DNA of 64,000 bases from Anolis carolinensis (Eukaryota), in NCBI RefSeq assembly GCF_035594765.1, contig NC_085841.1:68557574-68621573 (forward strand), written 5' to 3'. Below are positions 3,346 to 60,052 of this stretch, one piece after another. A program made the translations under genes and the position numbers. How positions within the stretch are numbered: position 1 is the stretch's first letter; every line of letters begins with the position of its first letter. The notes beneath the pieces are model-generated. The model was not told the origin of the DNA. It did not search any database and was given only the letters and a program-made list of their open reading frames with translations.

Positions 3346-3486
3346 NNNNNNNNNNNNNNNNNNNNNNNNNNNNNNNNNNNNNNNNNNNNNNNNNNNNNNN
3401 NNNNNNNNNNNNNNNNNNNNNNNNNNNNNNNNNNNNNNNNNNNNNNNNNNNNNNNNNNNNNNNNNNNNNNNNNNNNNNNNNNNNNN
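3346..3486. other. Assembly gap (141 N)
   Basis: Run of N. Confidence 1.
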
Positions 3487-33770: not shown

Positions 33771-35830
33771 AGACATAACCACTTAAACCTCCACCATTTA
33801 AAAGTATTTAATTACACAATCAATACTTCCATATAACTGCCTTGAGGACCCCAAGGCTTATTTTAACTTTTAAACCCCCTGAGTCCCCTTGGATCATCCA
33901 ATGACCTTATCACACACACACACACCCCAGGGCAGAAGTGTGCTGGCTCCATGTTGAGGAGGAAGTGTCCTAGGATGCTTGCCTGTTAGTTGCGGGTGAG
34001 GCCTCCACCGGAAACTCAAGGATGTCATATGATGGACTGTATGCCCATCCATCCCTCAACTGGGGCAGAAAATTCCTCATATGATGAGGTGCCTGCCTAC
34101 ACTAAAAAATAAACCCACAAGAACTGATGTTTCAATTTCTAGAAAGTTCCAAGAGTTTATGAGTAGGGTGCAACATTTTACTCTCTTGAAAGAAGTGGGA
34201 TAAAACATTTTAAAAATCAACATTTTCATGCCTGGCATTGCTCACAGTAACTGAAAAAATGCTGAAAATGGGGTTCTAAAGCATTAAAATTTGTCCATTT
34301 CCATAAAAGCTGCTGTCTCTGTGGTCCCTCTCCTATGCAGTACATCATTAAACCGAGCTGTGAACATGCTACTGTCTCTTACCACCAATCATGTTAGGGT
34401 ATTTATGTTCCCTGGAGATAGCATAGTAGTTATTTCACATACTTTTCATAGAATCATAGAAAAATAGAGTTGGAAGAGACCACATGAACCATCTAGTCTA
34501 ACCCCTTGTCATGCAGAAAGAGCACAAAGTACTTCTGATTACTGTGGCTTCTGGTTAGATAAACTAAAGCTTGGCAAGTTATGTTTCAACCCTACTCTGC
34601 CCATATGAGACATTCTAATATACCAGAGTTGAATTCTGTAAAGAATTTCACATTTTACAACATTGGCACATAAAGAGGTATCAGTCTCTCTTCAACAATG
34701 TCCCTGATATTCAGCTTCATGCTATACAGCTTTGTTTTGCTGTTTGCTGGTGTTCTTTGGTGTCATGAAGTTGACCCCCAACTTAATGGTGATGCCCTCA
34801 TTGGCTTTTCTTGGCAAGATTTATTGAGATAATGTTTGCCTTTGCCTCCTCTTTATGCTGACAGAATGTGATTCGCCCTAATGGGCTCTCAGCATCCTCT
34901 GATTCTGGCTCTCTCGGTTCACACCCAAAATTATCCCAACAATTCTGCAGCATTTTTGCTGGTTTACACTCTTTACAGAATTGGAACAGTTTCTCAAAAC
35001 AAACATTCCATTTGATGTGAATCCATGTTTTCTGTATGTGGGGATATGGCTAACAAGATAATGAGCAAAACAATAATCCACTATTACAATAATAAAGTGA
35101 TCACAAACATATACTTGTTCCCACAACTTATAAATGATGCAACAGTCATTGATATACAATGAAACATAAATTTGTTATATTCACAATGCTAATTGCTATT
35201 TCTTCCTTGTTGGAGAGAATTTCCAACAAAAGTGTCTTTAAACAGATTTCCTCTTTAAAGTAATAGTGTCTTTTTCTTTCTTGTAAAAGGAAATTTCCAA
35301 GAAAAGTTTGTATACACAGACTTTCCTCTATGCTTCCTTATGGAGAGCTTCCTCTTCCTTGTAGGGAACTTCCACAACCTGTTTTGACCTTAACAAAGTC
35401 TTCTTCAGGTGGAAAAGTTCTAATTTTACAAAATAAAGAGGGCCTAAAGGGAATGAACAAGAGTAGTTTCTTAATAGCACAAAACCCACATACCTCAGAC
35501 CCACATATCTCAAACATGCAACTTGCAAAGACAAAATTACTCACACCAAGTTCTCCTACATGATACTTTGTTCAGTTTGATTCCATAGTAAACACAAAAC
35601 TGTGAGACTGACTCTACTATTTAATATAGTAACACTTAAAGAGGCCAGGTGATGAAAAATGTAGTGTTGTAATTGTTGTTCTAAGATCACATTTAAAGAC
35701 CATACTCTTTAAATGTAAATGTAACTCATTGCACCTATAAAGTAACTCGGTTCTCCTTTGCAACATAACTTTTGGTGAAATATAATTTAATTGAAACAGA
35801 ATCCAGACAAAACAAGTGCTTGCCATATAG

Positions 35831-36697
35831 TGTGATGACTCATGGGCCTTGTAGTCCTGTTCCTAGTACTATTGTGGCAGACGAAGAGGAAAACATGGGG
35901 TTTTCGCCGGTTCAGCAAGAGCCGGAGTCTCTTCACCTGCAGGATGTTGATGTTTGTCCTCAAGAATTCAGCCAAACAGGCCTTGGGCAGAACTCCCCCC
36001 CGTTTCCCAGAAAAGAATCTTATTCCAGAGAAAGGGGAATCAGAGAAGCTCAACGGAGGAGTTTACGCATTGCTGCCAGAAATCAAGCTGATTAGGCTTG
36101 CTTCCCTTGGGAAATTCTAAGGAGTCACACATCTGGACAGAGTTGGGTTTCGCTTCTCGTTCTCTAGGGAAAGAGTTCTGTTGGCGGGAAAACGAGACCC
36201 AATATAGGTGGTTGGCGCGAGGAATTCTTTGCGGAGTCAATTGATCAGCTTCAGGAGAGAGATCGTGTGTGGACTTCGTATCCCAGTTCCTTGCTTCTCG
36301 GATCAAGTTTTCAAGCCTTGCCTAGCCTTGCAGTTTTACCACGGACCCTGCTCCACGCTCATGTTTTGCCTTTGTTTCCAGTTATGAATCTAGCCAAGAA
36401 TCAAGTTTAATTCCAGCCTTGTTGTCAAGCTTCATTGAACTCTAGGACTCTGCTAATTCCCCACACTATTGCTTGGCAAAGTGTGTGTCTCAGTCAAGTG
36501 GATTAAAACTTTGAACTCTAATATCTTATATTGGACAATACATTTTTGGACTATATTTGACCTCCTTTGAAAGGTCTGCTTCTGAACTATATTCTTCACT
36601 TGTTTTTATTGCTTTTATATATTTCTTTAATAAAGATATTAGATAGAGATTGGCCTCTGCGTATGGTTATTGGTGCTCTGCTGCCAGGGTTCTGACA
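35831..36697 (+). mobile_element. Solo LTR, Ty3/Gypsy-like (copy 1)
   Basis: TGTGA...TGACA termini; 5-bp TSD TATAG/AATAG (1 mismatch); TATA-like AATATAGG near 36200; AATAAA at 36629-36634. Homologous to 37309-38255 and 53890-54754. Confidence 0.9.
35832..36095 (+). CDS. Conserved LTR (U3)-encoded ORF, copy 1 (VMTHGPCSP...SPPF...RRSLRIAARNQAD)
   Basis: Open from LTR base 2, ATG at 35835. Protein motifs are conserved across three diverged LTRs through synonymous changes. Translation not demonstrated. Confidence 0.6.
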   Translation: MMTHGPCSPVPSTIVADEEENMGFSPVQQEPESLHLQDVDVCPQEFSQTGLGQNSPPFPRKESYSRERGIREAQRRSLRIAARNQAD

Positions 36698-36704
36698 AAT
36701 AGGG

Positions 36705-36917: not shown

Positions 36918-36948
<31 letters not shown>

Positions 36949-37010
36949 TTTAGATGAATGTGTGTTTTAGCAATGTTGTAACTTGCCACGAGCCATGAGA
37001 AGAGGCGGGC

Positions 37011-37065
<55 letters not shown>

Positions 37066-37308
37066 ATACAAAAAAAGTAGCTTGTTTCAGGTAAGTACAC
37101 TGCTGATCATGCTAAGAAATAAATGCCCCTGAGAAATAAATTCCCATTCAGTGAGTTGGATCCAAAGCTAGGTCCATACAACTAGGTGGGAAACATCGTA
37201 TATTTTCAGCAGCCTGAAGAGACTCCTCCCATTGACAGTCTTTCCAGCCTATTGTAAACAATTCATAGATGTTTGGGTGACTGAGATGAATGGATTGAGC
37301 AAGTTGGT

Positions 37309-38255
37309 TGTGATGACTCATGGGCCATGTAGTCCCGTTCCTAACGCTGTTGTGACAGAGGAAGAGGAAAACTTGGGTTTTCCACCATTTCAGCCAGAAT
37401 TGGAACTTTCCCAGCCTGAATTGGAGCCCTTGCACCTGCAAGAGGTTTGCCTTCCAGAAATCTGCCAAACAAGCCCTGAGTCAGAATCTCCCCCATTTTC
37501 TCGCCGTAGTTATTATCAACAACAAAAAGGAGTTCAGCAGGCTAATCGCAGAAGCCTGAGAATCGCAGCCAGGCATTCAGCTGATTAAGACTGCTTCCAT
37601 GAGAAATTCTAGGGAGTCATGCATCTGGACACAGAGATTGACTTTCGGTTCTGATTCCCCAGAGAAGTGTTCTTTGGTGGGAAAACGAGACCCTATTTAG
37701 GTTCCTTGCCCCGAAGGAATCTTGCGGAGTCAATTCGTCAGCTACTGGAGTAGGCTGTGTGTGGACAGCGCTATTCCCGTTTCCAAGCCTCGTTCCTGTT
37801 TCCAAGCCTTCGTTCACGTTTCCAGCCTTGTTTCTGCTTCACGGACCTTGCCTTGTTTCCTAGGACTCAGCCTTGCCTTCCAGGACCTTGCCTTGCTTCC
37901 CGGACCTTGCCAAGTAATTTACCACGGATCTTGTCCCTGTTCCTCGTTCCTTGTTGCCTTGAATCAAGTTATTTCCTTGCCTTGCCTAAGTTTCATGGAC
38001 TAAAGGACCTTGTCATCTCCCCTCACTTTGCCTGGCAAAGTGAGTGTTTCGGTTACTGGATTACAACTTTGGACCTTACTATTTCATATTGGACATTGTT
38101 TTCCTGGACTATATTTGACCTTTCCTGAAAGGACATCTTCTGAACTATATTCTACACTTATTTTTATTGCCTTTACTTATTTCCTTAATAAAGATATTAG
38201 ATAGATTCTGGCCTCTGTGTATGGTTATTGGTGCTCTGCAGCCTGGGTCGTGACA
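37309..38255 (+). mobile_element. Solo LTR, Ty3/Gypsy-like (copy 2)
   Basis: TGTGA...TGACA termini, perfect 5-bp TSD TTGGT, AATAAA near 38187. Confidence 0.93.
37310..37588 (+). CDS. Conserved LTR-encoded ORF, copy 2
   Basis: VMTHGPCSPVP...SPPFSRR...RRSLRIAARHSAD*. Contains an in-frame 21-bp tandem duplication (QPELELS/QPELEPL). Confidence 0.6.
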   Translation: MMTHGPCSPVPNAVVTEEEENLGFPPFQPELELSQPELEPLHLQEVCLPEICQTSPESESPPFSRRSYYQQQKGVQQANRRSLRIAARHSAD

Positions 38256-39742
38256 TTGGTGTGCTTGAAAATCACAACGGAAAGACAATTTTTTTTAATT
38301 TTTTTTATTGTGAAACATATTTTCCAAAAGTGATACATTAAAAAGTGGGGGAACAATCTGTAGGGATAGAAAAGTAGGAATAGAAAAGTAACGGAAGGCC
38401 AATCTCGATCACAATCAGAAGACTTCATATGGCCAAGCAAAACTGTAGATAAGAGTGAAGGACTTCGGCCCAGAAATACCATAGTTTTGAGCCTGAGGTT
38501 CTAGAAAATGTCTACAGAGAACATAATTTGTTAAACATGGTTAAATGTAACCACCAATACTGGCCCTGTGGCTACGGGGATCATATTGCATATCTACTTA
38601 TATGGGAATAAGCCAAATGAAGCTTAATGAGAATAAGCCTAATAAAGCTCAATATTTCTGAACAGAAGTTTACAGGACTGCTATGGTAAAATAATTTTCC
38701 CTTTAAAACAATGACCCAACTTTTCAGATATTCTGGGGTTTGTAGTTTAGTGAGGTACTGAAGCTCTTGTGTTGAGAAATAGAAATGTCCTTCTGTGAAC
38801 TGCAAACCTAGAACTCCATATGTTGTTGCCATAACAGTTAAAGTGTTATAGGTTTGTAGATTTCCTAGGAATCATAGGGCTATAATTGTCTTTTCAAAAG
38901 ATAGATTTACCAAAAAAAATCAGATACTTGGTTTGGACAGGAATGGAAAGCAGACAGAATAAAAGTTGAACCAAATGCACACCAGACATCAATTAAAAAT
39001 GCAAACATTTCAGCCACTTCACATAGATAATGCTTTAACAAAAAGCTTTTATCTACTTGAAGTGACTGAAATATTTCCATTGCATTACTAATGACTCCAA
39101 TCCACTTGTAAGCCTCTGATATAAGCTGCATTAATTCACTTGACTGTCAGTTCTGTTTCTGCTTTCAATTTCTGCCTAAAGCCCTCTGTGCCTATATGGT
39201 TCCATAGGCATACATGGGCCTAAGACGCCTCAGTCTGGGTTCCCATTTCGCTATATCCCACAGTTCTCTGCACTGAACTAGTTTGTGTGAAATAGGAATC
39301 CACAACTGTGTAGGGGATTTCCAGTGAAAACATTACAATTATATAACTGTAGTCAAAAAGACTCTCTCAGTAGTTGGTCATTAAGGTAATTCATGGTTAC
39401 GTTTGTAATAAAATGATGTCTTTCCACATTAACAATGCTAGAACTGAAGTGTTCAAAGGATCTATCCAGAAATTTCCCATGAGGAGGTAATAAGTATGTT
39501 GCAATAATACCTAGTATTTACAGTGCTTTCCTGTGTTCAAAAATCCCCATGCACATTAGCTCAAAAATTCTTACCAAAGCTCTGTGGAGCAAGAACGGAT
39601 TGTTTTGCCTATATTGCAAAATGGCAGATGAAGTATATTACTACCAATTGAGATTTAGACCAGATCTTCTTAAGTTCACTTCCCAGCCTGTTTCTTACAT
39701 CGGTTTTCAATTCAACCTGGAGTTTCACTGGATGCTTGTTAG

Positions 39743-39789
<47 letters not shown>

Positions 39790-42505
39790 TTAATTACTTA
39801 TTAATTGTCCTCCATCCACGATGCTCTAGGCGATTTACAAGATAAAATTGTAAAGGATAACAATACATACATAAAAATATTAATAAAATTAACATAGATT
39901 AAAAGCTCTAGTAAAGAGCCAGGTCTTGAGTGCTAGGGTAAAAGGCCCTAACTCACACATGGCTCTCATATAGGGCGGCAAGGCATTCCAATAAGGCAGG
40001 GGCAGAAATAGAAAAAGCTCTGGGTCTGGTCCTTTCCAAATGCACTTCTCTAGGACCCGGTACATAAAGTAAGTCTTGTTGGGATGGTCGTTGCGACCTC
40101 CGATGATGGGAGAAGGAGAGACGGTCCCTAAGGTACGATGGGCCCTGGCCATAAAGAGTTTTCAAAACTAGCATCTTATATAGACCACGGTAATCCATTG
40201 GAAGCCAATGCAGATGCTGTAGCACTGGTGTTATGTGGCATTTCATGGGTGTTCTTGTGAGTAGCCTGGCTGCCGCATTCTGAACAATACGGAGCTTTTG
40301 GGTCGTGGATATCGGAAGGCCAACATACAGGGCGTTGCAATAGTCCAGCCTAGACGTGACCGTGGCATGGATGACTGTTGCCAGCGCCTCATCAGATAGA
40401 TAGGGTGCCAGTTGCCTCGCTTGTCGTAGATGGAAAAAGGCCTGTTTGCTGGCAGCAGCGACCTGAGCTTCCATTGTCAGCTGCGAATCTAAAACGACAC
40501 CCAGGCTCTTAACGGTAGGTGAAGGAGATAGGGCAGCACCATCGAAAGTGGGTAGCAAATGGGTCAGACCGGTTGAGCGGCCATGCCAGAGAATCTCGGT
40601 CTTCGCCGGGTTCACCTTCAGTCTGCTAGCACGTAGCCAGTTCGACAGAGCCTCCAGACATAAGGTGAAATTGTCTGGTATTGACGTTGCTCCAGGCTCC
40701 AGGCGCAGAAGGAGTTGGGTGTCGTCCGCATATTGATAGCAGTCTAGGCCGAAACTCCGAACCAAACTAGCAAGGGGTCTAACGTAGATGTTGAAGAGAA
40801 GAGGGGAGAGAATTGCACCTTGGGGTACCCCACATAGGAGGGGAGATCTGTCAGAGACTTGATCCATATACTCCACGCATTGGCTCCGGTTTCGCAGAAA
40901 TGAGTTGAACCAATTGAGGGCCTGACCGCGAACTCCGGACATGGCGAGACGGTGAATCATTAGATCGTAGTCAACGGTGTCAAACGCTGTGGTAAGGTCG
41001 AGAAGTACCAGTAGCGCTGATCCGCCGCTATCAGACTGGCGACGAAGTTCATCTGTAATGGCAACCAGGACTGTCTCCGTCCCATGGCCAGGGCGGAAGC
41101 CTGACTGGAAAGGGTCCAGGCTGGCTGTATCCTCCAGAAATTGTTGCAATTGTCCCAGTACAGCCCGCTCTATCATCTTACCCAAGAATGGGAGGTTGGA
41201 GACAGGACAATAGTTGGCAAGGGTCATGGGATCCAAGCTAGGCTTTTTTAGCAAGAGACGAACCCTTGCCTCTTTTAGATTGTCCGGGAAGACCCCCTGT
41301 TCAAGAGAGCCATTGATGATATTACTCAACGGATCGAGTAGACCTTTCAGGCAGCTCTTCACCAGCCAGGAGGGACACGGATCAAGGGAACAGGTGGTTG
41401 GTTTTGCAACAGCCAGGATTCTAGCGACATCTTCCCTGTCAAGTGGAGTAAATCGGTCAAAGATAGGCCCACTAAGCGGCCACAAAGTCTCAAGCTCACT
41501 CAAGGTATCAACTGTAGGGGGCAGTTCCTGCCGAAGCACGGTGATTTTATCAGTGAAAAACTTCTGGAATGCCTCTGCTGTAAGAGCCGTGGTTGCTGGG
41601 TTTTGGACTAAGGGAGCCGCACTGGTCAAAGCACGAACGATTTTGAATACTTGAGCTGGGTGCGATCTAGCAGAGGCTATTAAAGAGGAATTGTAAGATT
41701 TTTTAGCATCCTTGACGGCTGATTCGTAGGACCTGCGAAAAGCCTTGAAAGCGGACAGTGACACCTCGTCGGGTTTCCGTCGCCACCGATGTTCCAGCCG
41801 CTTTCGTGCTTGCTTCATCATCCGCAGCTCATTAGTGTACCAGGGGGAGCAATTCCGGTGAGGGCGAAGGAGGCGTCTGGGGGCAATCTCATCCAAGGCA
41901 GCCAACAAACTGACATTCCAGGTGTTGACTAGCTCATTGAGAGTGACGCACACAGCTCCCAGGCCTTTAAGGGCATTCAAGAACCTAGCAGGTTCCATGA
42001 GTCTCCTGGGCCGAGCAAAGATTGGTGTGGCAGGATGGGGAGGAGGAGATGGAATCTCAATCCGGGCCTTCAGGACAGCGTGATCAGACCAGGGAACATC
42101 AATTACCGCGGATAGAGATGTTCGTACTCCGATATTAAAAATCAGGTCCAGAGTGTGGCCGGCCCAATGAGTAGGGCGAGTCTTGAGTAGTGAGAGCCCC
42201 AGAGCTTCAAAGGTTGGTACTATGTCCTTAGTCACAGATGAAGATGGCAGTGCTTCGACATGTACATTAAAGTCACCCAGAACAATAAGTCTGGGGAACT
42301 TCAGGACCCAGTCCGCCACAAGATCTAATAAATTCAGCAGACTCTCTCCCGGAGACCCAGGCGTGCGGTAAACTACAAGAATGGCTAGGGATTCCATGCT
42401 AGCCAGGACCACACCAACACACTCAATACCGGCTATCTTTGGAGTTGGAATAGCTTTGATGTTAAAATAATCACGGGAGAGTATTGCTACCCCTCCACCC
42501 CTCCT
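39743..42505 (-). mobile_element. L2-clade LINE, 5'-truncated, young
   Basis: APE and RT coding region, short 3' UTR and a (GAT)n tail (TCA repeat at 39743-39789). Truncated at RGGGVA within the endonuclease. Confidence 0.93.
39953..42412 (-). CDS. L2 ORF2 (partial APE endonuclease plus reverse transcriptase), 819 aa
   Basis: VYRTPG, LGDFN, GHTLDL, WSDH (APE); QSGFRPGHGTET, GVPQGAILSPLLFNIY, YADDTQL (RT); SRLDYCN, LHWLP. Frameshift near 39990; the normal end WNALP...LKTWLF is in another frame. Confidence 0.9.
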   Translation of the reverse strand: MVLASMESLAILVVYRTPGSPGESLLNLLDLVADWVLKFPRLIVLGDFNVHVEALPSSSVTKDIVPTFEALGLSLLKTRPTHWAGHTLDLIFNIGVRTSLSAVIDVPWSDHAVLKARIEIPSPPPHPATPIFARPRRLMEPARFLNALKGLGAVCVTLNELVNTWNVSLLAALDEIAPRRLLRPHRNCSPWYTNELRMMKQARKRLEHRWRRKPDEVSLSAFKAFRRSYESAVKDAKKSYNSSLIASARSHPAQVFKIVRALTSAAPLVQNPATTALTAEAFQKFFTDKITVLRQELPPTVDTLSELETLWPLSGPIFDRFTPLDREDVARILAVAKPTTCSLDPCPSWLVKSCLKGLLDPLSNIINGSLEQGVFPDNLKEARVRLLLKKPSLDPMTLANYCPVSNLPFLGKMIERAVLGQLQQFLEDTASLDPFQSGFRPGHGTETVLVAITDELRRQSDSGGSALLVLLDLTTAFDTVDYDLMIHRLAMSGVRGQALNWFNSFLRNRSQCVEYMDQVSDRSPLLCGVPQGAILSPLLFNIYVRPLASLVRSFGLDCYQYADDTQLLLRLEPGATSIPDNFTLCLEALSNWLRASRLKVNPAKTEILWHGRSTGLTHLLPTFDGAALSPSPTVKSLGVVLDSQLTMEAQVAAASKQAFFHLRQARQLAPYLSDEALATVIHATVTSRLDYCNALYVGLPISTTQKLRIVQNAAARLLTRTPMKCHITPVLQHLHWLPMDYRGLYKMLVLKTLYGQGPSYLRDRLSFSHHRRSQRPSQQDLLYVPGPREVHLERTRPRAFSISAPALLECLAALYESHV

Positions 42506-50049: not shown

Positions 50050-50218
50050 AGATGCCCTCTTTCTCTGGACACCTCCCGCCTCAGTCATTATTATTACTAT
50101 TATTATTATTCTCATTATTATTCAGGGAGGAAACAGCCAGGCTTTGAAACTACAAAGCCATTCAATGCTAATTGCCCTCTTTCTCTGCACACCCTTCACT
50201 TCTGAGTCATCATTATTA

Positions 50219-50257
<39 letters not shown>

Positions 50258-50508
50258 CATTATTATTATTATTATTAAGTTGCTGTGAACCATGAAAATG
50301 AGTTCACACCCAGCATTACAAAACTCTACAACCAGGACAGTAAATAAAGAACACTCTGAAAACAGGAGCATTCCAGACAGGAAACAATCAGGGCCAGCTA
50401 ACACCTCCCAACAAAAGATTCCCCCAGGAAGGAATCAACCAGGCTTTCAAACTACAAGGCCATTCAATGATAATTGCCCTCTTTCTCTACATACCCCCTA
50501 CCTCATAA

Positions 50509-50557
<49 letters not shown>

Positions 50558-50791
50558 GTTGATGTAAACAATGAAAATGAGTAAAACCAGGCACCCAGCA
50601 TTACAAAACACCACAACCAGGACAGTAAATAGAGAACACTCTGAAAACAGGAGAATTCCAGACAGGAAACAATCAGAGCCAGCTAACACCTTCCAACAAA
50701 AGATTCCCCCAGGAAGGAAACAGCTTTCAAACTACAAGGCCATTGAATACTAAATGCCCTTTTTCTCTGCACACCCTCCACTTCAGAGTCA

Positions 50792-50846
<55 letters not shown>

Positions 50847-51270
50847 CATCATTATTATTAGGGTGCTGTGAACCATGAAACTGTACAAAACCAGCCACCC
50901 AGCATTACAAAACTCTACAACCAGGACAGTAAATAAAGAACAACACTCTGAAAACAGGAGAATTCCAGACAGGAAACAATCAAGGCCATCTTTGAAGCAG
51001 CAATACTGCTCTGTACTACAGAAGCTGACTAACCAAAGATTCCCCTAGGTAGCAAGCAGCCAGGCTTTGACGCAGCGAGGCTATTCATTGCAATTCTAGC
51101 AGCCCAAAAAACTATTCTCCTAGAACGCAAGTTCCCAGGCTTCCTAGCAGCAATCCTATTCCATTGCATTCCAGCTCACCAAACAAGGATTCCCATAAGA
51201 AGAAAACCATCAGGCTTTGAGGCTGCAAGGCTATTCACTGCTATTCCACCTGGCCAACAAATGATTCCCA
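50050..51270 (+). repeat. Tandem array of ~280-300-bp Penelope-derived units separated by (ATT)n, decaying to ~70-bp units
   Basis: ACAACCAGGACAGTAAATAAAGAACACTCTGAAAACAGGAG..TTCCAGACAGGAAACAATCA recurs at ~50328, ~50614 and ~50918. The same sequence is on the minus strand at 56060-56310. Confidence 0.8.
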
Positions 51271-52948: not shown

Positions 52949-53889
52949 AATTGTTCTTTAACATTTATACCCTATTAGTATTAACTGGTGTAAGCTGTCC
53001 CATACTGGGAAAAGGTAGATTACAAATAGATATAAAAACATCTGAGTGAATGGAACTGACCCATTTATATAAATAAAAAGGTAATGTCCATTTGTGGGAC
53101 CTCATATCTTCCAAACTATTTCACCAATTGCTACGAAATTTGGGCACAACGTAGCATTTAAACTGTTGAGTGTTTCAAGGTATTCACATACTTACTATCA
53201 CAAGCCTATCACACCTCAGACAGGTAAAACCATGCCCCTTAGCAATGGCCAATCTGTTGCACCCCTAGGCTACAGAGGCACTTCAAAATCACACTGGAGC
53301 CCCAGAATATGAGCAAAGCAAGCTGTTTATTGAAGATTATATGCAAGCAGTAGCAAATCAAGGTTCAAAGTAAATGAAATAAGGTTTAAATCCACAAGGT
53401 AGAAAATACTCGGGAATCTTGAAGCAAGACACAGAAGACACAGAAGATCTGAGTCCAAACAGGATATCAAAATTAGTCCAAACAAGGTATCGAAATTAAT
53501 CCAAGGCACAGGATCAAACTGGAATGCAGGAGACAAACCTCAAAGTTTAGTCCAAGGGACAGGATCAATGCTAGAACACAAGGCAGGATCTTGACTGGAA
53601 CAGGAATCCAAACTGCAAACTGCTGGAATACTAACTGGATATCCAAAAATCTCCAAAGACAAGGACAAGTCTGGAACAAGACTCAAGGCACAAGGCTGCA
53701 TGAATTGACATGGAAGTTCACAGAAACATGGAGCATGAAGCAGGGATCTCTCTCTCAATGAGCAATGTTACTACCTCTGAATCTCTCACAGAAAACAGTG
53801 TCTCTTAAAAGTAAACTCAAGGCCTTTTTCCGTGGGAGGTCTGCTCATTCTTCTTTCTCAATAACAATCTCTGGCAGCGCCGAAAACCC

Positions 53890-54754
53890 TGTCATGCTCA
53901 AGGCAGCGGAGCACCAAGAACCATACACGGAGGCCAATAAACTATCTAATATCTTTATTAAGGAAATATATAAGAATGATAAAAACAAGCAGAAAATATA
54001 GTCCAGAAGCAGACCTTTCAAATGAGGTCAAATATAGTCCAGAAATAGTTTGTCCAATAAATGATATTAGAGTCCAAAGATAAAATCCAATAAACCGAAA
54101 CACACACTATTGCCAAGCAATAGTGTGGGGAATTGTCCAGGGTCTTTCAAGGTCCAAGGTAAAATCCACAACAAGGCTGGAAACAAAACTTGATTCTAGG
54201 AACAAGGTCCGTGACTATGAACAAGGCAAGGCAATTCTTGAATACTTGAATAAGCAAGGCAAGGAAACTGGATTTGCGAACTTTGCGAAGTCCACACAAG
54301 GCTGGAACATGATTTCACTCCTGAAGCTGCTCTGTTGTCTCCACACGGAATCAACCGTGCCAGGCACCTTTAACTGGGTCTTGTTTTCCCGCCAAACAGG
54401 TGTCCAGCGATCTCTTTCCCTAGAGAACGGGAAGCAAAACCCAACTTTCCAGATGTGAGACTCCCTGGATTTTCCCAGGGGAAACATGGCTAATCAGTGT
54501 CTTGTTTGGCTGCAATTCTTAAACTCCTGCGAACCCGCTCTTTCACTCCCCTGTCTGCAGCAAAGGACTGTCTCCTAGCGAAGGGAGGTGAGAGCTGTTC
54601 AAGGTCTGTTTTAATGGGCTCTTGGGCAAGAACATCAACATCAAGCATCTGGAAGGATTCCGGCTGTTGTTGTTCCGGAGAAAACCCCATGTTTTCATCT
54701 TCGTCAGCCACAGTGACACTAGGAGCGGGACTACAAGGCCCATGAGGCATCACA
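53890..54754 (-). mobile_element. Solo LTR, Ty3/Gypsy-like (copy 3, nested)
   Basis: Minus-strand TGTGA...TGACA with a perfect 5-bp TSD AACCC. Homologous to copies 1 and 2. Confidence 0.93.
54490..54753 (-). CDS. Conserved LTR-encoded ORF, copy 3
   Basis: VMPHGPCSPAP...SPPFARR...RRSLRIAAKQDTD*. Same length (88 codons) and LTR register as copy 1. Confidence 0.6.
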   Translation of the reverse strand: MMPHGPCSPAPSVTVADEDENMGFSPEQQQPESFQMLDVDVLAQEPIKTDLEQLSPPFARRQSFAADRGVKERVRRSLRIAAKQDTD

Positions 54755-55430
54755 AACCCTCCCTTTCTCTTCTGTGCTGATAAATCACTTTCTTTTGGTC
54801 AAGCTCATTAGCCTTATCACAACTAGAATCCCCATCTGGCAAAAGAAAGTCTGACCTTGACTCCTTCAAGGAATGTAGTTCAAGCTGCTGGCTTGAAACC
54901 ATTGTTTGCCTGTTCCCAGAATCCTCCAAACCAAGCTCTGGCTGCATAGGAATCTCAGGCTCAAACTCAGAGTCCTTTGACAAGTCAGGTGCAGTAGCAA
55001 TCTCAGGTGTAGGAGCAAACACAGAGTCAGGAGCAGGAGCAATCACAAGTTGAACAGGCCCAACCTCAGGTCAGGCTACAACACAATCAGTCTCCTCCTC
55101 CCTAAGCAACTGTCGAGGCATATGGCTTCTCCCCTTAGCAATGGTGCTAGCAATGGCCAATCATTCTCCTCCCTTTAGCAACCGGCATGGGTGGGGCTGC
55201 AAGGGATGGCTAGGCCCACCTCCTTGCCACTCAGTTCAGCTTGGCGATTTATGCAAAGCTGAAGCTCTGTGGCCTAGCCACGGAGAGGAGGGATACTGAG
55301 AGTTAAAATCCTTTTTTTGAGCTCCAGCAAGATGAATGAGAAAAACCACTACTGTACTTATTATATTCTTATAAGTTTATTACATTATTATTATATTTTA
55401 TTATTATAGTTATTATATTATTATATTATA

Positions 55431-56059: not shown

Positions 56060-56320
56060 TCTTTGGAATGCCCAGGGCGGGAAAAAGAACTCTTTTCTGT
56101 TTGAGCCAAGTGGGAATGTTGCAATTGCTCAATTTGATTAGCATTGAATAGCCTTGCAGCTTCAAAGCCTGGCTTCTTCCTGCCTGGGGGAATCCTTTGT
56201 TGGGAGGTGTTAGCTGGCCATGATTGTTTCAAGTCTGGAATTCCTCTGTTTTCTGAATGGTGTTCTTCATTTACTGTCCTTCATTTACTGTCCTAATACT
56301 GGTAGCCAGATTTTCAATAT
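56060..56320 (-). mobile_element. Penelope-like element fragment
   Basis: Reverse complement CCAGCTAACACCTCCCAACAAAGGATTCCCCCAGGCAGGAAG..CCAGGCTTTGAAGCTGCAAGGCTATTCAATGCTAATC is recalled as lizard Penelope terminal-repeat sequence. Confidence 0.7.
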
Positions 56321-56979: not shown

Positions 56980-59900
56980 AGATTTGGGTAAAAGACACAA
57001 TGGAACTACAAGGGAATAGATAAAAGTCTGGTCAGACTCACAAACCTCATCAGGCGCACTTTAAACCAGATCCACTATATTACCCACAACCATAGGGTAC
57101 TGCCAAAAGGCTAAACGGAGGGCTGCACAAACACAGCAAGGACCAAGTACAGAGAGCACAATAATCTCAAATAAACAGCCCGGGGGGAGGTCACAGGGGC
57201 TTACATGTCTTTACACTAAGGCACAGAGCATGGGAAATAAGCAAGACAAACTCCAATTCTTAGCACAGCACCACACATACGATGTCATAGGCATCACTGA
57301 AACCTGGTGGGATGACTCCCATCACTGGAATTTAGCCATTGAGGGCTATAACCTCTTTCACAGAAATAGAACAAAGGGGAGAGGAGGGGGAGTAGCTTTA
57401 TATGTCAAAAACAGTTAAGTTGCAGAAGAAATGCAAGACTATAATCCGGGAAACCAGCTTGAAAGCATCTGGATAAGAATCAAGGGAACCGGGACTCAAA
57501 AAGATCTTGTTGTGGGTGTCTCTACTACAGACCTCCGAGTCAGGATGAAGGACTTGATGAAGCCTTCTGTCAACAGCTGACCAAACAGGCACAAAGAAGA
57601 GATATAGTAGTCATGGGTGATTTCAACTATCCCGATATCTACTGGAAAACAAACTCGGCCAAGAGTACAAAGTCCAACAAATTCCTCACTTGCCTTGCAG
57701 ACAATTTTATGGTCCAGAAGGTAAAAGAGGCAACAAGGGGATCGGCTACTCTTGATCTAATCTTAACAAATGTGGAAGACCTGATCAATAAAGTCGAAGT
57801 GGTCGGATCCTTAGGGGCAAGTGACCATGTGCTCCTGCAGTTTGCCATACAAAGGGAGGCTGAAACTAAGACAAGTCAAACACGCATTCTGGACTTTAAG
57901 AGAGCTGACTTCCAAAAAATGAAGGAATTACTGAGTGGCATTCCATGGACACCAATATTAAAAAACAAGGGAGTTAAGGATGGATGGGAGTTTTTCAAAA
58001 GTGAAATACTCAAGGCGCAAATGCAAACAGTGCCAACAAAGAAGAAAAATAAGACAAGTGCAAAGAAGCCAGAATGGATGTCCAAAGAACTTCTAACTGA
58101 GCTAAGAGTCAAAAGAGACATGCACAAGAAGTGGAAAAGGGGAGAAATCATCAAAGAAGAATTCAAACGTATAGCCAACTCCTGTAGGGAAAAGGTTCGC
58201 AAGGCTAAAGAGCAAAATGAGCTCAGGCTTGCCAGGGACATAAAAAACAACAAAAAAGGCTTTTTTGCTTACGTTGGTAGAAAAAGGAAGAACAAGGAGG
58301 TGATAGGGCCACTGCGAGGAGAAGATGGGGTGATGGTGACAGGGGACAAGGAAAAGGCAGAACTACTTAACGCCTTCTTTGGCTCGGTCTTCTCACAAAA
58401 AGAAAGCCATCTTCAATCTCAGCAACATGGAATGGACGTAGGATTGGGGGAAATCCAACCCCAAATAGGGAAACAAGTTGTCCAGGAACACCTGGCCTCT
58501 CTAAACGAATTCAAGTCCCCAGGGCCAGATCAGCTACATCCAAGAGTATTGAAGGAGCTAGCAGAAGTTATTTCAGAACCACTGGCAATTATCTTCGAGA
58601 GTTCTTGGAGAACAGGAGAAGTCCCAGCAGATTGGAGGAGGGCGAATGCGCTCCCTATCTTCAAGAAGGGAAAAAAGAACGACCCAAACAATAACCGTCC
58701 GGTCAGCCTCACGTCGATACCAGGCAAGATTCTGAAAAAGATCATTAAGGAAGTGGTCTGCGAACACTTAGAAACAAATGCGGTCATTGCTAATAGTCAA
58801 CACGGATTTACCAAAAACAAGTCATGCCAGACTAATCTGATCTCTTTTTTCGATAGAGTTACAAATTGGGTTGATATAGGGAATGTTGTGGATATAGTGT
58901 ACCTGGATTTCAGTAAGGCCTTCGTCAAAGTCCCCCACGACCTTCTGGCAAACAAACTAGTAAAATGTGGGCTAGACAAAACTAGGTGGATCTGTAATTG
59001 GCTAGGCGAACGAACCCAAAGGGTGCTCACCAATGCGTCGTCTTCATCTTGGAAAGAAGTGACAAGTGGAGTGCCACAGGGCTCCGTCCTGGGCCCGGTT
59101 CTGTTCAACATCTTTCTTAATGACTTAGACGAAGGGTTAGAAAGGACGATCATCAAATTTGCAGACATCAACAAACTGGGAGGGATAGCTAACACTCCAG
59201 AAGACAGGAGCAGAATTCAAAACGATCTTGACAGACTAAAGAGATGGGTTGAAACTAACAAAATGAAGTTCAACAGGGACAAATGCAAGATACTTCACTT
59301 CGGCAGAAAAAATGGAATGCAAAGATACAGAATGGGGGACGATGCCTGGCTCGACAGCAGTACATATGAAAAAGATCTTGGAGTCCTCGTGGACAACAAG
59401 TTAAACATGAGCCAACAATGTGATGCGGCAGCTAAAAAAGCCAATGGGATTCTGGCCTGGATAAATAGGGGTATAGCATCTAGATCCAGGGAAGTCATGC
59501 TCCCCTCTATTCTGCCTTGGTCAGACCACACCTGGAATACTGTGTCCAATTCTGGGCACCGCAGTTGAAGGGAGATGTTGACAAGCTGGAAAGTGTCCAG
59601 AGGAGGGCAACTAAAATGATTAATGGTCTGGAGAACAAGCCCTATGAGGAGCGGCTTAAAGAGCTGGGCATGTTTAGCCTGCAGAAGAGAAGGCTGAGAG
59701 GAGACATGATAGCCATGTATAAATACGTGAGGGGAAGTCATAGAGAGGAGGGAGCAAGATTGTTTTCTGCTGCCCTGCAGACTAGGACACGGAACAATGG
59801 CTTCAAACTACAGGAAAGGAGATTCCACCTGAACATCAGGAAGAACTTCCTCACTGTGAGGGCTGTTCGGCAGTGGAACTCTCTGTCCCCGACTGTGGTG

Positions 59901-60052
59901 GAGGCTCCTTCTTTGGAGGCTTTTAAGCAGAGGCTGGATGGCCATACATCGGGGGTGCTTTGAATGAGATTTCCTGTTTCTTGGCAGGGGGTTGGACTAG
60001 ATAGCCCATGAGGTCTCTTCCAACTCTACTATTCTATGATTCTATGATTCTA
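56980..60052 (+). mobile_element. CR1 LINE with near-complete but disrupted ORF2
   Basis: CLYT..SMGNKQ, GITETWW, GGGVALYV, YYRPP, MGDFN, SDH (APE); QHGF, YLDFSKAF, SGVPQGSVLGPVLFNIF (RT); (ATTCTATG)n tail. 5' boundary approximate. Confidence 0.95.
57200..59963 (+). pseudogene. CR1 ORF2 pseudogene (APE-RT)
   Basis: In-frame TAA at 57416-57418, frameshifts near 57520 and 59505, and the RT catalytic FADD altered to FADI at ~59158-59170. Confidence 0.9.

What the first reader, a model, noticed from the sequence alone, without database searches (positions are those of the whole stretch)
37547..37573. LTR peptide ends in an HMGN-like nucleosome-binding motif (RRSLRIAA vs RRSARLSA)
Seen: RRSLRIAA is invariant in all three copies (36054+, 37547+, ~54531-), 5 residues before the stop, after an acidic low-complexity linker. 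Established: the HMGN nucleosome-binding core RRSARLSA contacts the H2A-H2B acidic patch, and viral proteins such as KSHV LANA and foamy-virus Gag tether to chromatin with arginine anchors. Inference: the peptide could be a retrotransposon chromatin tether, either for integration targeting or as a small accessory chromatin protein. RRS also fits basophilic kinase sites, and a plain NLS is an alternative explanation.
Basis: partly seen in the sequence, partly recalled or inferred. Interest (0 to 1): 0.85.

Follow-up and report, generated by a model that had tools for sequence, protein, structure and literature searches.

The report
Integrase tail with HMGN-like anchor
The "LTR peptide" is really the last ~90 amino acids of a lizard Gypsy (chromovirus) integrase that reads into its own LTR, and it ends in a tightly conserved copy of the short arginine motif that HMGN, Dsup and yeast Dot5 use to grip the nucleosome, so the element may carry a built-in chromatin tether that nobody has tested.

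Summary
RRSLRIAA occurs three times (36054+, 37547+, 54531-), with none expected by chance. Copies A and B differ at 9 of the 24 bases, all synonymous (simulated P about 1e-5).

The three copies lie in solo LTRs of 865-947 bp with TG..CA ends and 5-bp target duplications. The peptide is not a stand-alone LTR product. In Anolis carolinensis proteins (PR-RT-RNaseH-IN-chromodomain, clusters of 94 and 366 members) the Pol frame runs ..GDS|VMTHGPCSP.. into the LTR and stops 85-97 codons later. Of 54 such proteins, 47 end in RRS[A/L]RIAA. The Pol body is 83-98% identical between subfamilies, the tail only 50-66%, so the motif is a conserved island in a fast-evolving, predicted-disordered tail.

The motif keeps every residue that contacts the H2A-H2B acidic patch in the HMGN2 and Dsup cryo-EM structures. 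The RRSARIAA variant is 7 of 8 identical to yeast Dot5 RRSARIAT, a proven acidic-patch binder.

Best reading (about 0.55): an arginine anchor beside the chromodomain that tethers the intasome to nucleosomes. Binding is untested.

First readers noted the same tail on other pieces of this genome; none was followed up.

The parts
37547..37573 (+). Codons for RRSLRIAAR in solo LTR B (the finding)
36054..36080 (+). Codons for RRSLRIAAR in solo LTR A; 9 synonymous and 0 non-synonymous differences from copy B in the 8 motif codons
54505..54531 (-). Codons for RRSLRIAAK in solo LTR C
37310..37588 (+). LTR-borne end of the pol reading frame in LTR B: 92 codons plus stop, from LTR base 2 (V-M-T-H-G-P-C-S-P...). 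It is 91/92 identical to the tail of A. carolinensis integrase protein P0063.
35832..36095 (+). LTR-borne end of the pol reading frame in LTR A (87 codons plus stop)
54490..54753 (-). LTR-borne end of the pol reading frame in LTR C (87 codons plus stop)
37309..38255 (+). Solo LTR B, 947 bp, TGTG...GACA, AATAAA at 38187-38192, target-site duplication TTGGT at 37304-37308 and 38256-38260
35831..36697 (+). Solo LTR A, 867 bp, TGTG...GACA, AATAAA at 36629-36634, flanks TATAG (35826-35830) and AATAG (36698-36702)
53890..54754 (-). Solo LTR C, 865 bp, TGTG...GACA, AATAAA at 53954-53959, target-site duplication GGGTT at 54755-54759 and 53885-53889. The purine run just upstream belongs to the target site and is not a PPT.

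Best explanation
The site encodes the conserved C-terminal motif of the Pol/integrase of an Anolis Ty3/Gypsy chromovirus. In the intact element the pol frame passes the polypurine tract and runs 85-97 codons into U3 of the 3' LTR, so every LTR, including the three solo LTRs here, carries a copy of the tail. The genomic RNA has U3 only at its 3' end, so the tail is made only as the end of Pol, right after the integrase chromodomain. The tail is predicted to be disordered. It has an acidic first part and a basic last part that ends in RRS[A/L]RIAA[K/R] plus four residues. I propose that this motif is an HMGN-type arginine anchor that sits in the H2A-H2B acidic patch. Together with the HP1-like chromodomain, which would read the methylated H3 tail, it would give the integrase two contacts on one nucleosome, holding the intasome on chromatin and biasing where it integrates. 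Phosphorylation of the serine could switch binding off, as in HMGN. Shown here: the frame continuity, the protein-level selection, the match to the motif and the predicted disorder. Inferred: the binding and its role. Sub-confidences: integrase tail 0.95; motif under protein-level constraint 0.9; binds the acidic patch about 0.55; serves tethering or targeting about 0.45.
For: 1. Continuity with integrase. A profile of the three peptides finds A. carolinensis proteins in which the tail follows a chromodomain (P0005). Searches return IN proteins with H2C2, rve, SH3_Tf2-1 and Chromo domains followed by the tail, and Pol proteins of about 1210-1220 aa (PR-RT-RNaseH-IN-Chromo-tail) in clusters of 94 and 366 members.
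2. The junction needs no splice. The first T of the LTR is the third base of the Ser codon in ..GDS|VM...
3. The same layout is seen at DNA level in relatives. In Rhineura L001 the LTRs are 99% identical, a PPT lies next to the 3' LTR, and a single-exon ORF ends 87 codons inside it. In Crotalus L002 the ORF ends about 110 codons inside the LTR.
4. Selection. Pairwise dN/dS is 0.27-0.34 at dS 0.8-1.6. The motif shows 9 synonymous and 0 non-synonymous changes. Of 54 Anolis proteins that reach the C-end, 47 have RRSARIAA or RRSLRIAA. The Pol body is 83-98% identical between subfamilies against 50-66% for the tail.
5. Motif match. In HMGN2 (RRSAR), R23 and R26 anchor the acidic patch. In Dsup (RRSSRLT), R363, R364, S365 and R367 make the contacts (PMC12487698). 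Yeast Dot5 RRSARIAT needs R6, R7 and R10 for nucleosome binding (10.64898/2026.01.14.699602).
6. Context. The chromodomain keeps the aromatic cage, F/W/F against Y21/W42/F45 of CBX1. The tail has pLDDT below 50 while the chromodomain is near 90.
Against: There is no binding data of any kind. The HMGN nucleosome-binding domain also has a Lys/Pro-rich flank that touches DNA. Here only five residues follow the core, and there is no homology to HMGN beyond the 8-mer (no Pfam or PDB hit at E up to 10). An 8-residue match can arise by convergence or chance, and this scan looks at very many motifs. The related tails in Rhineura and Crotalus are acidic-then-basic but lack RRSxR, so the motif is not general to the clade. 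AF2 puts a weak helix over the motif, whereas HMGN and Dsup bind in extended form. No intact Anolis element was seen as DNA: the Anolis evidence rests on predicted proteins, some of which are clearly chimeric models.
Confidence: 0.55

Rival explanations
1. The basic end is a nuclear localisation signal that brings integrase or the preintegration complex into the nucleus, as C-terminal signals do for yeast Ty1 and Ty3 integrases (named from my own knowledge).
For: The last 33 residues hold 7-9 K/R. The position at the integrase C-terminus matches the Ty1 precedent.
Against: The conserved positions include S, I, A and A, not just the basic ones, and position 4 alone toggles between A and L. There is no Lys in the core, and the one flanking K/R toggles. 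The upstream basic pair that a bipartite signal would need is not conserved (RK, RR, RH, HH). A signal read only by charge would not need 9 synonymous and 0 non-synonymous changes across all 8 codons.
Confidence: 0.15
2. The motif is a docking site for another host protein rather than for histones. One example is a beta-strand ligand of a BET ET domain, as in the C-terminal tail of MLV integrase. Another is a basophilic kinase site (RRS) whose phosphorylation controls integrase.
For: MLV integrase uses its extreme C-terminal tail to bind BET proteins (PMC4027182, listed). L-R-I-A-A has some alternating hydrophobic/basic character. R-R-S-L fits R-x-S-hydrophobic kinase sites.
Against: The more common variant, A-R-I-A-A, loses the alternating pattern. 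Identity to proven acidic-patch binders (7 of 8 with Dot5) is much higher than to any ET ligand I can name. A kinase site is compatible with the main reading rather than opposed to it, since HMGN S24 phosphorylation blocks binding.
Confidence: 0.12
3. The basic end folds back on the acidic first part of the tail, or on integrase or DNA, and regulates integrase assembly or activity without touching chromatin.
For: The tail is split sharply by charge (9-12 acidic and 0-1 basic residues, then 7-9 basic). The acidic block EEN[LM]GF is as conserved as the basic motif.
Against: Simple charge pairing would not demand the exact RRSxRIAA spacing and the small residues. There is no structural support: the tail is low-confidence throughout.
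Confidence: 0.08
4. A free-standing micro-protein translated from the LTR itself.
For: An ATG sits at LTR bases 5-7 and the frame is open in all three solo LTRs. Two gene models start at this ATG and splice to gag (P0011, P0102).
Against: U3 lies upstream of the LTR's own transcription start, so the ORF in a 5' or solo LTR is not in the element's RNA. In the 3' LTR it is in frame with, and continuous with, pol in hundreds of predicted proteins. The gene models that splice U3 to gag also carry antisense LTR sequence at their ends and look like artefacts.
Confidence: 0.03
5. The conservation is at DNA level (a U3 enhancer or integrase-binding site) and the peptide reading is incidental.
For: The first ~30 bases of the LTR (VMTHGPCSP) are nearly invariant even at third positions, as expected for the integrase-binding end of the LTR.
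Against: At the motif the DNA differs at 9 of 24 bases between A and B while the peptide is unchanged. Whole-tail dN/dS is about 0.3.
Confidence: 0.02

Closest known systems
HMGN nucleosome-binding core (RRSARLSA) and the HMGN-like motifs of tardigrade Dsup (RRSSRLTS) and yeast Dot5 (RRSARIAT)
   Same: It has the R-R-S-x-R core with the same spacing, an aliphatic residue after the anchor arginine, then two small residues. It sits in a disordered region. The Anolis variant RRSARIAA is 7 of 8 identical to Dot5 and 6 of 8 to HMGN; the window's RRSLRIAA is 6 of 8 and 5 of 8.
   Different: It lies at the extreme C-terminus of a retroelement integrase, after a chromodomain and an acidic stretch. The Lys/Pro-rich DNA-contacting flank of HMGN is absent. 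There is no detectable homology outside the 8-mer. Binding has not been tested.
Chromodomain targeting of chromoviral (Ty3/Gypsy) integrases, e.g. MAGGY and Tf1 (Gao et al. 2008, from my own knowledge)
   Same: The domain order is IN core, SH3-like domain, then a chromodomain with an intact aromatic cage. The logic is the same: a chromatin reader fused to integrase.
   Different: Here the protein continues about 110-125 residues past the chromodomain. The last 85-97 of these are encoded in the LTR and end in a second putative nucleosome contact.
C-terminal tail of MLV integrase binding the BET ET domain
   Same: It is a short linear motif at the very end of a retroelement integrase that would decide where integration goes (PMC4027182).
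   Different: MLV uses a host adaptor protein. The motif here resembles direct histone binders.
Viral acidic-patch tethers: KSHV LANA N-terminus, foamy virus Gag chromatin-binding sequence, CMV IE1 C-terminal tethering domain (from my own knowledge; LANA is cited)
   Same: They use an arginine anchor in a disordered peptide to hold a viral complex on nucleosomes. CMV IE1 also has an acidic stretch followed by a C-terminal anchor.
   Different: Those motifs sit on Gag or on episome-maintenance proteins, not on integrase, and their sequences differ from the HMGN type.

Membership tests
Ty3/Gypsy chromovirus LTR retrotransposon | LTRs with TG..CA ends flanked by a short (4-6 bp) target-site duplication | tested here: met
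   All three copies start TGTG and end GACA. The 5-bp duplications are perfect for B and C and 4 of 5 for A.
Ty3/Gypsy chromovirus LTR retrotransposon | Pol domain order PR-RT-RNaseH-IN | tested here: met
   P0086, P0099 and P0100 carry the same tail. They have RVT_1, RT_RNaseH, Integrase_H2C2, rve and SH3_Tf2-1 in that order, with a DSG protease motif at the N-end. These are proteins from elsewhere in the Anolis genome; the window itself holds only solo LTRs.
Ty3/Gypsy chromovirus LTR retrotransposon | Chromodomain at the integrase C-terminus | tested here: met
   Pfam Chromo scores E 5e-10 at P0007 346-394. The best PDB matches are HP1/CBX1, with the aromatic cage kept. The fold has pLDDT about 90.
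Ty3/Gypsy chromovirus LTR retrotransposon | PPT next to the 3' LTR and PBS next to the 5' LTR | tested here: inconclusive
   A PPT is seen in the Rhineura relative L001. No intact Anolis element was available as DNA, and the PBS was not examined.
HMGN-like acidic-patch-binding motif (functional class: HMGN, Dsup, Dot5) | Three arginines at i, i+1 and i+4, with serine at i+2 | tested here: met
   RRS[A/L]R is present in all three window copies and in 47 of 54 Anolis proteins. The contact residues are defined in PMC12487698 and the Dot5 paper.
HMGN-like acidic-patch-binding motif (functional class: HMGN, Dsup, Dot5) | Aliphatic residue at i+5 followed by small residues | tested here: met
   The tail has I-A-A. 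Dot5 has I-A-T, HMGN L-S-A and Dsup L-T-S.
HMGN-like acidic-patch-binding motif (functional class: HMGN, Dsup, Dot5) | Lies in an intrinsically disordered segment | tested here: inconclusive
   The tail has pLDDT 40-50, but a low-confidence helix is drawn over the last 20 residues.
HMGN-like acidic-patch-binding motif (functional class: HMGN, Dsup, Dot5) | Nucleosome binding that depends on the arginines and on the H2A-H2B acidic patch | not testable with these tools
   This needs EMSA or pull-down.
HMGN protein family (Pfam HMG14_17) | Homology over the whole ~30-residue nucleosome-binding domain and the protein beyond it | tested here: not met
   No Pfam family at E up to 10 for five tails. 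No HMGN chain among PDB hits at E up to 10. The tail is not an HMGN family member; only the core motif is alike.
Classical importin-alpha NLS | K-K/R-x-K/R core, or two basic clusters 10-12 residues apart | tested here: not met
   By reading the alignment of 33 tails: there is no Lys in the core, and the upstream pair varies (RK/RR/RH/HH) and lies 13-15 residues away. Non-classical signals are not excluded.
LEDGF/HRP2 TND-interacting motif (read by other first-stage notes on this genome) | FxGF with both phenylalanines, after a helix and an 8-16-residue acidic linker | tested here: not met
   The conserved block in this family is E-E-N-[L/M]-G-F. The first Phe is Asn in all 33 tails. FxGF is described as essential for LEDGF/HRP2 partners (PMC9987994).

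The most novel reading that the evidence does not exclude
U3 of these squamate chromoviruses doubles as a swappable cassette that encodes the integrase's chromatin-targeting end. The tail evolves about ten times faster than Pol but keeps short docking motifs, and different lineages have settled on different chromatin ligands: an HMGN-type acidic-patch anchor in Anolis and an AT-hook-like KRGRP end in Rhineura. Combined with the chromodomain, the Anolis integrase would be a bivalent nucleosome reader, and LTR exchange between subfamilies would re-aim integration.
Probability: 0.3. Interest if true: 0.8.

Novelty: new variant of a known kind. Interest (0 to 1): 0.65.

Why it matters
Retroelements choose their integration sites through modules on integrase: chromodomains, the Ty5 targeting domain, the MLV tail that binds BET, HIV integrase with LEDGF. 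A direct histone acidic-patch anchor on an integrase is not described in the papers I could search. [quoted passage not shown] A 20-30-residue peptide and standard nucleosome assays would settle the question. It also shows that an LTR can be under two constraints at once, as promoter DNA and as protein-coding sequence, and it warns annotators that open frames in solo LTRs may be relics of pol rather than micro-proteins.

Tried and rejected
- **Copy C as a 3' LTR.** I first took the purine run upstream of copy C for a polypurine tract. Nothing upstream looks like a chromodomain or pol, and the perfect GGGTT duplication shows it is a solo LTR in a purine-rich site.
- **Chance hits.** P0004 and P0006 are CAP/SCP-repeat proteins that match the acidic block by chance.
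- **Family and fold searches.** Pfam on the tails found nothing at E up to 10. PDB by sequence gave only a chance RIO2 hit at E 1.6. The ESM Atlas gave a best score of 0.75, which is not usable.
- **DNA for Anolis proteins.** Look-ups for P0005 and P0010 were not on record, and the gene range of P0002 was too long. The pol-into-LTR layout was therefore shown at DNA level only in the Rhineura and Crotalus relatives.
- **Sequencing runs.** 20 runs of one coded organism hold LTR B, and none is on record as RNA.
- I repeated it by reference.
- **Complex prediction.** It was not run.
- **LEDGF/TND reading of the acidic block.** It was considered and fails on the first phenylalanine.

Full report
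**1. The observation.** Translation of 37547-37573 gives RRSLRIAAR. A degenerate back-translation of RRSLRIAA matches exactly three places: 36054 (+), 37547 (+) and 54509-54531 (-). None of 100 shuffles gave a match. In each copy five residues follow the 8-mer before the stop. The preceding 54-59 residues hold 9-12 acidic and 0-1 basic residues, and the last 33 hold 7-9 basic ones.

**2. The repeats are solo LTRs.** The three copies align from TGTGATG to ..TGACA.
- Exact limits are A 35831-36697, B 37309-38255 and C 53890-54754 on the minus strand.
- Each has AATAAA about 65 nt before its 3' end.
- Each is flanked by a 5-bp duplication: A TATAG/AATAG, B TTGGT/TTGGT, C GGGTT/GGGTT.
- I first took the purine run before copy C for a polypurine tract. 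The perfect duplication and the absence of any pol-like sequence upstream show that C is a solo LTR as well.
- No other copy or internal part of the element lies in the window. The large ORFs elsewhere belong to CR1-like LINEs.

**3. The frame is coding.** The open frame starts at LTR base 2 and ends 265-280 bases into the LTR.
- Pairwise dN/dS among the three copies is 0.27-0.34 at dS 0.8-1.6, with most differences at third codon positions.
- The coding part is the most diverged part of the LTR at DNA level (58-72% identity, against 78-82% for the last 260 columns). The open frame is therefore not a by-product of DNA conservation.
- In the eight motif codons A and B differ at 9 of 24 bases and every change is synonymous. 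In 200,000 simulations of nine random substitutions the peptide survived about once in 100,000.
- The first ~30 bases of the LTR (VMTHGPCSP) are instead nearly invariant even at third positions. That fits a DNA-level constraint on the LTR end that integrase binds.

**4. What the peptide belongs to.** A profile of the three peptides, searched against 1.84 billion representative proteins with no length filter, found four real relatives. One of them, P0005, has a chromodomain that runs straight into the tail.
- Word-index searches then returned Anolis carolinensis proteins named Gypsy retrotransposon integrase-like.
- P0007, P0009, P0010 and P0012 have Integrase_H2C2, rve, SH3_Tf2-1 and Chromo domains, followed by ..GDS|VMTHGPCSP.. 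and the tail.
- P0086, P0099 and P0100 are Pol proteins of 1211-1223 aa with protease, RT, RNase H, integrase, chromodomain and tail. They come from clusters of 94 and 366 members at 90% identity.
- The junction needs no splice: the first T of the LTR is the third base of the Ser codon.
- Copy B's tail is 91/92 identical to that of P0063, and copy A differs by one residue from P0001. The window is therefore from A. carolinensis or a very close relative.

**5. The same layout at DNA level in relatives.** No intact Anolis element could be fetched as DNA.
- In the amphisbaenian Rhineura floridana (L001) a single-exon ORF ends 87 codons inside a 3' LTR. That LTR is 99% identical to the 5' LTR 4941 bp upstream and is preceded by a polypurine tract.
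- In Crotalus (L002) the ORF ends about 110 codons inside the LTR.
- Running pol into U3 is thus a shared trait of this squamate chromovirus group.
- The element's RNA carries U3 only at its 3' end, so the tail can be made only as the end of Pol. The open frames in solo and 5' LTRs are silent copies. This last step is inference from standard LTR-element biology.

**6. How well the motif is kept.** Among 54 Anolis proteins that reach the C-end, 30 have RRSARIAA and 17 have RRSLRIAA. Seven differ by one residue, as expected for some decayed copies.
- Tails come in lengths of 85, 87, 92 and 97 residues and are only 50-66% identical between subfamilies. The 700 residues of Pol before the LTR are 83-98% identical.
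- The alignment of 33 distinct tails shows a few conserved islands: VMTHGPCSP, EEN[L/M]GF, LHLQ, SP[P/V]F and the terminal RRS[A/L]RIAA[K/R].
- Conserved islands in a fast-changing segment are the usual signature of short linear motifs.
- AF2 models the chromodomain at pLDDT about 90 and the tail at 40-50, with only a weak helix over the last 20 residues.
- The Rhineura and Crotalus tails are also acidic first and basic at the end, but they lack RRSxR.

**7. Comparison with known nucleosome binders.**
- Cryo-EM of HMGN2 resolves RRSAR (residues 22-26), with R23 and R26 at the two ends of the acidic patch.
- In Dsup (PPRRSSRLT), R363, R364, S365 and the anchor R367 make the contacts.
- Modelling of phospho-S24 in HMGN2 predicts repulsion from the acidic patch (PMC12487698).
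- Yeast Dot5 carries RRSARIAT, and R6, R7 and R10 are needed for nucleosome binding in vitro and for chromatin association in cells (10.64898/2026.01.14.699602, also PMC13347269).
- The Anolis tail keeps all of these residues at the same spacing. Its only variable position (A or L) is the one that also varies between HMGN (A) and Dsup (S).
- RRSARIAA is 7 of 8 identical to Dot5.
- The tail is not an HMGN family member. There is no Pfam or PDB match beyond the core, and the Lys/Pro-rich DNA-contacting flank is missing. The likeness is best read as convergence on a short motif.

**8. Proposed mechanism.** The chromodomain aligns with HP1/CBX1 and keeps the aromatic cage (F, W, F against Y21, W42, F45), so it probably reads a methylated H3 tail. 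About 110-125 residues further on, the integrase would present an arginine anchor for the H2A-H2B acidic patch. Two weak contacts on one nucleosome would hold the intasome on chromatin and could bias target choice. The serine offers a phospho-switch. All of this is inference; no binding has been measured.

**9. Rival readings.**
- *Nuclear localisation signal:* weakened, because the non-basic positions are equally fixed and the classical pattern is not met.
- *Docking site for another host factor or kinase:* possible.
- *Intramolecular role for the basic end:* possible.
- *Free-standing LTR micro-protein:* unlikely given the continuity with pol.
- *Purely DNA-level constraint:* contradicted by the synonymous changes.

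**10. Earlier notes of this scan.** Several first-reader notes on other pieces of the same genome describe the same tail and motif, and some already read it as the integrase C-terminus. None had been followed up. I reached the same reading independently through.
- Other notes read the acidic block as a LEDGF/TND-binding FxGF motif and say the integrase lacks a chromodomain.
- In the family studied here the chromodomain is present.
- The block is E-E-N-[L/M]-G-F, with Asn in place of the first Phe in all 33 tails. That fails the published requirement (PMC9987994).

**11. Novelty.** Searches of the held literature for acidic-patch or arginine-anchor motifs on LTR-retrotransposon integrases, and for HMGN-like motifs with retrotransposons, found only general reviews and the Dsup and Dot5 papers. 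The library lacks most subscription journals, so this is not proof of novelty. I rate the finding a new variant of a known kind: an integrase-borne chromatin-targeting module of a type not yet described on integrases.

**12. Limits.**
Nothing from those places was sent to search tools afterwards, and there is no expression evidence.
- No complex prediction was run, because histone sequences could not be supplied by reference and the method is reported to fail for this motif.

Noticed in passing
L001:9579-9843 (Rhineura floridana relative): The LTR-encoded integrase tail of the Rhineura chromovirus ends in K-R-G-R-P-V-S-L-R-P-K-R, which reads like an AT-hook (GRP core between basic residues). 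A different chromatin or DNA-binding motif would then sit at the same position as the Anolis HMGN-like motif. Pfam gives no hit, so this rests on reading alone.
   Followed up: partly
window 35877-35900, 37355-37378 and the matching part of 54490-54753 (-): A second conserved island in the tail, E-E-N-[L/M]-G-F, is invariant at E, N, G and F in 33 tails. It is one residue away from the LEDGF/HRP2 FxGF motif (Asn instead of the first Phe). Its partner is unknown.
   Followed up: partly
proteins P0100, P0124, P0105, P0114 (Anolis carolinensis): Pol bodies that are 89-97% identical carry LTR-encoded tails that are only 50-58% identical and of different lengths. Either U3 evolves much faster than pol, or LTRs are exchanged between subfamilies.
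   Followed up: partly
proteins P0011 and P0102 (Anolis carolinensis gene models): Two gag-containing gene models start at the ATG at LTR bases 5-7, use 24-39 codons of the tail frame and then jump to gag. P0011 also ends in antisense LTR sequence. They are probably annotation artefacts, but a real U3-to-gag splice was not excluded.
   Followed up: no
proteins P0001, P0071, P0103, P0104, P0016 and others: Many public gene models fuse pieces of this element to host genes or to LINE reverse transcriptase, under names such as calmodulin-lysine N-methyltransferase, KCNQ5 and TM9SF2. These are annotation chimeras worth flagging.
   Followed up: no
window 39953-42412 (-) and 57613-59963 (+): Two LINE ORFs with endonuclease and reverse transcriptase domains, CR1-like by my reading of the sequence (Pfam RVT_1 and Exo_endo_phos_2). 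LTRs A and B lie only about 600 bp apart in a repeat-rich stretch.
   Followed up: partly
window 50141-50942: A tandem array with a period of about 285 bp, three to four units at 78-95% identity. Related inverted copies lie near 56125-56280.
   Followed up: no
window 36920-36960 and 37025-37062: AAT/ATT microsatellites lie between LTR A and LTR B.
   Followed up: no
window 3346-3486: A run of 141 N (gap or masked). It was left untouched.
   Followed up: no
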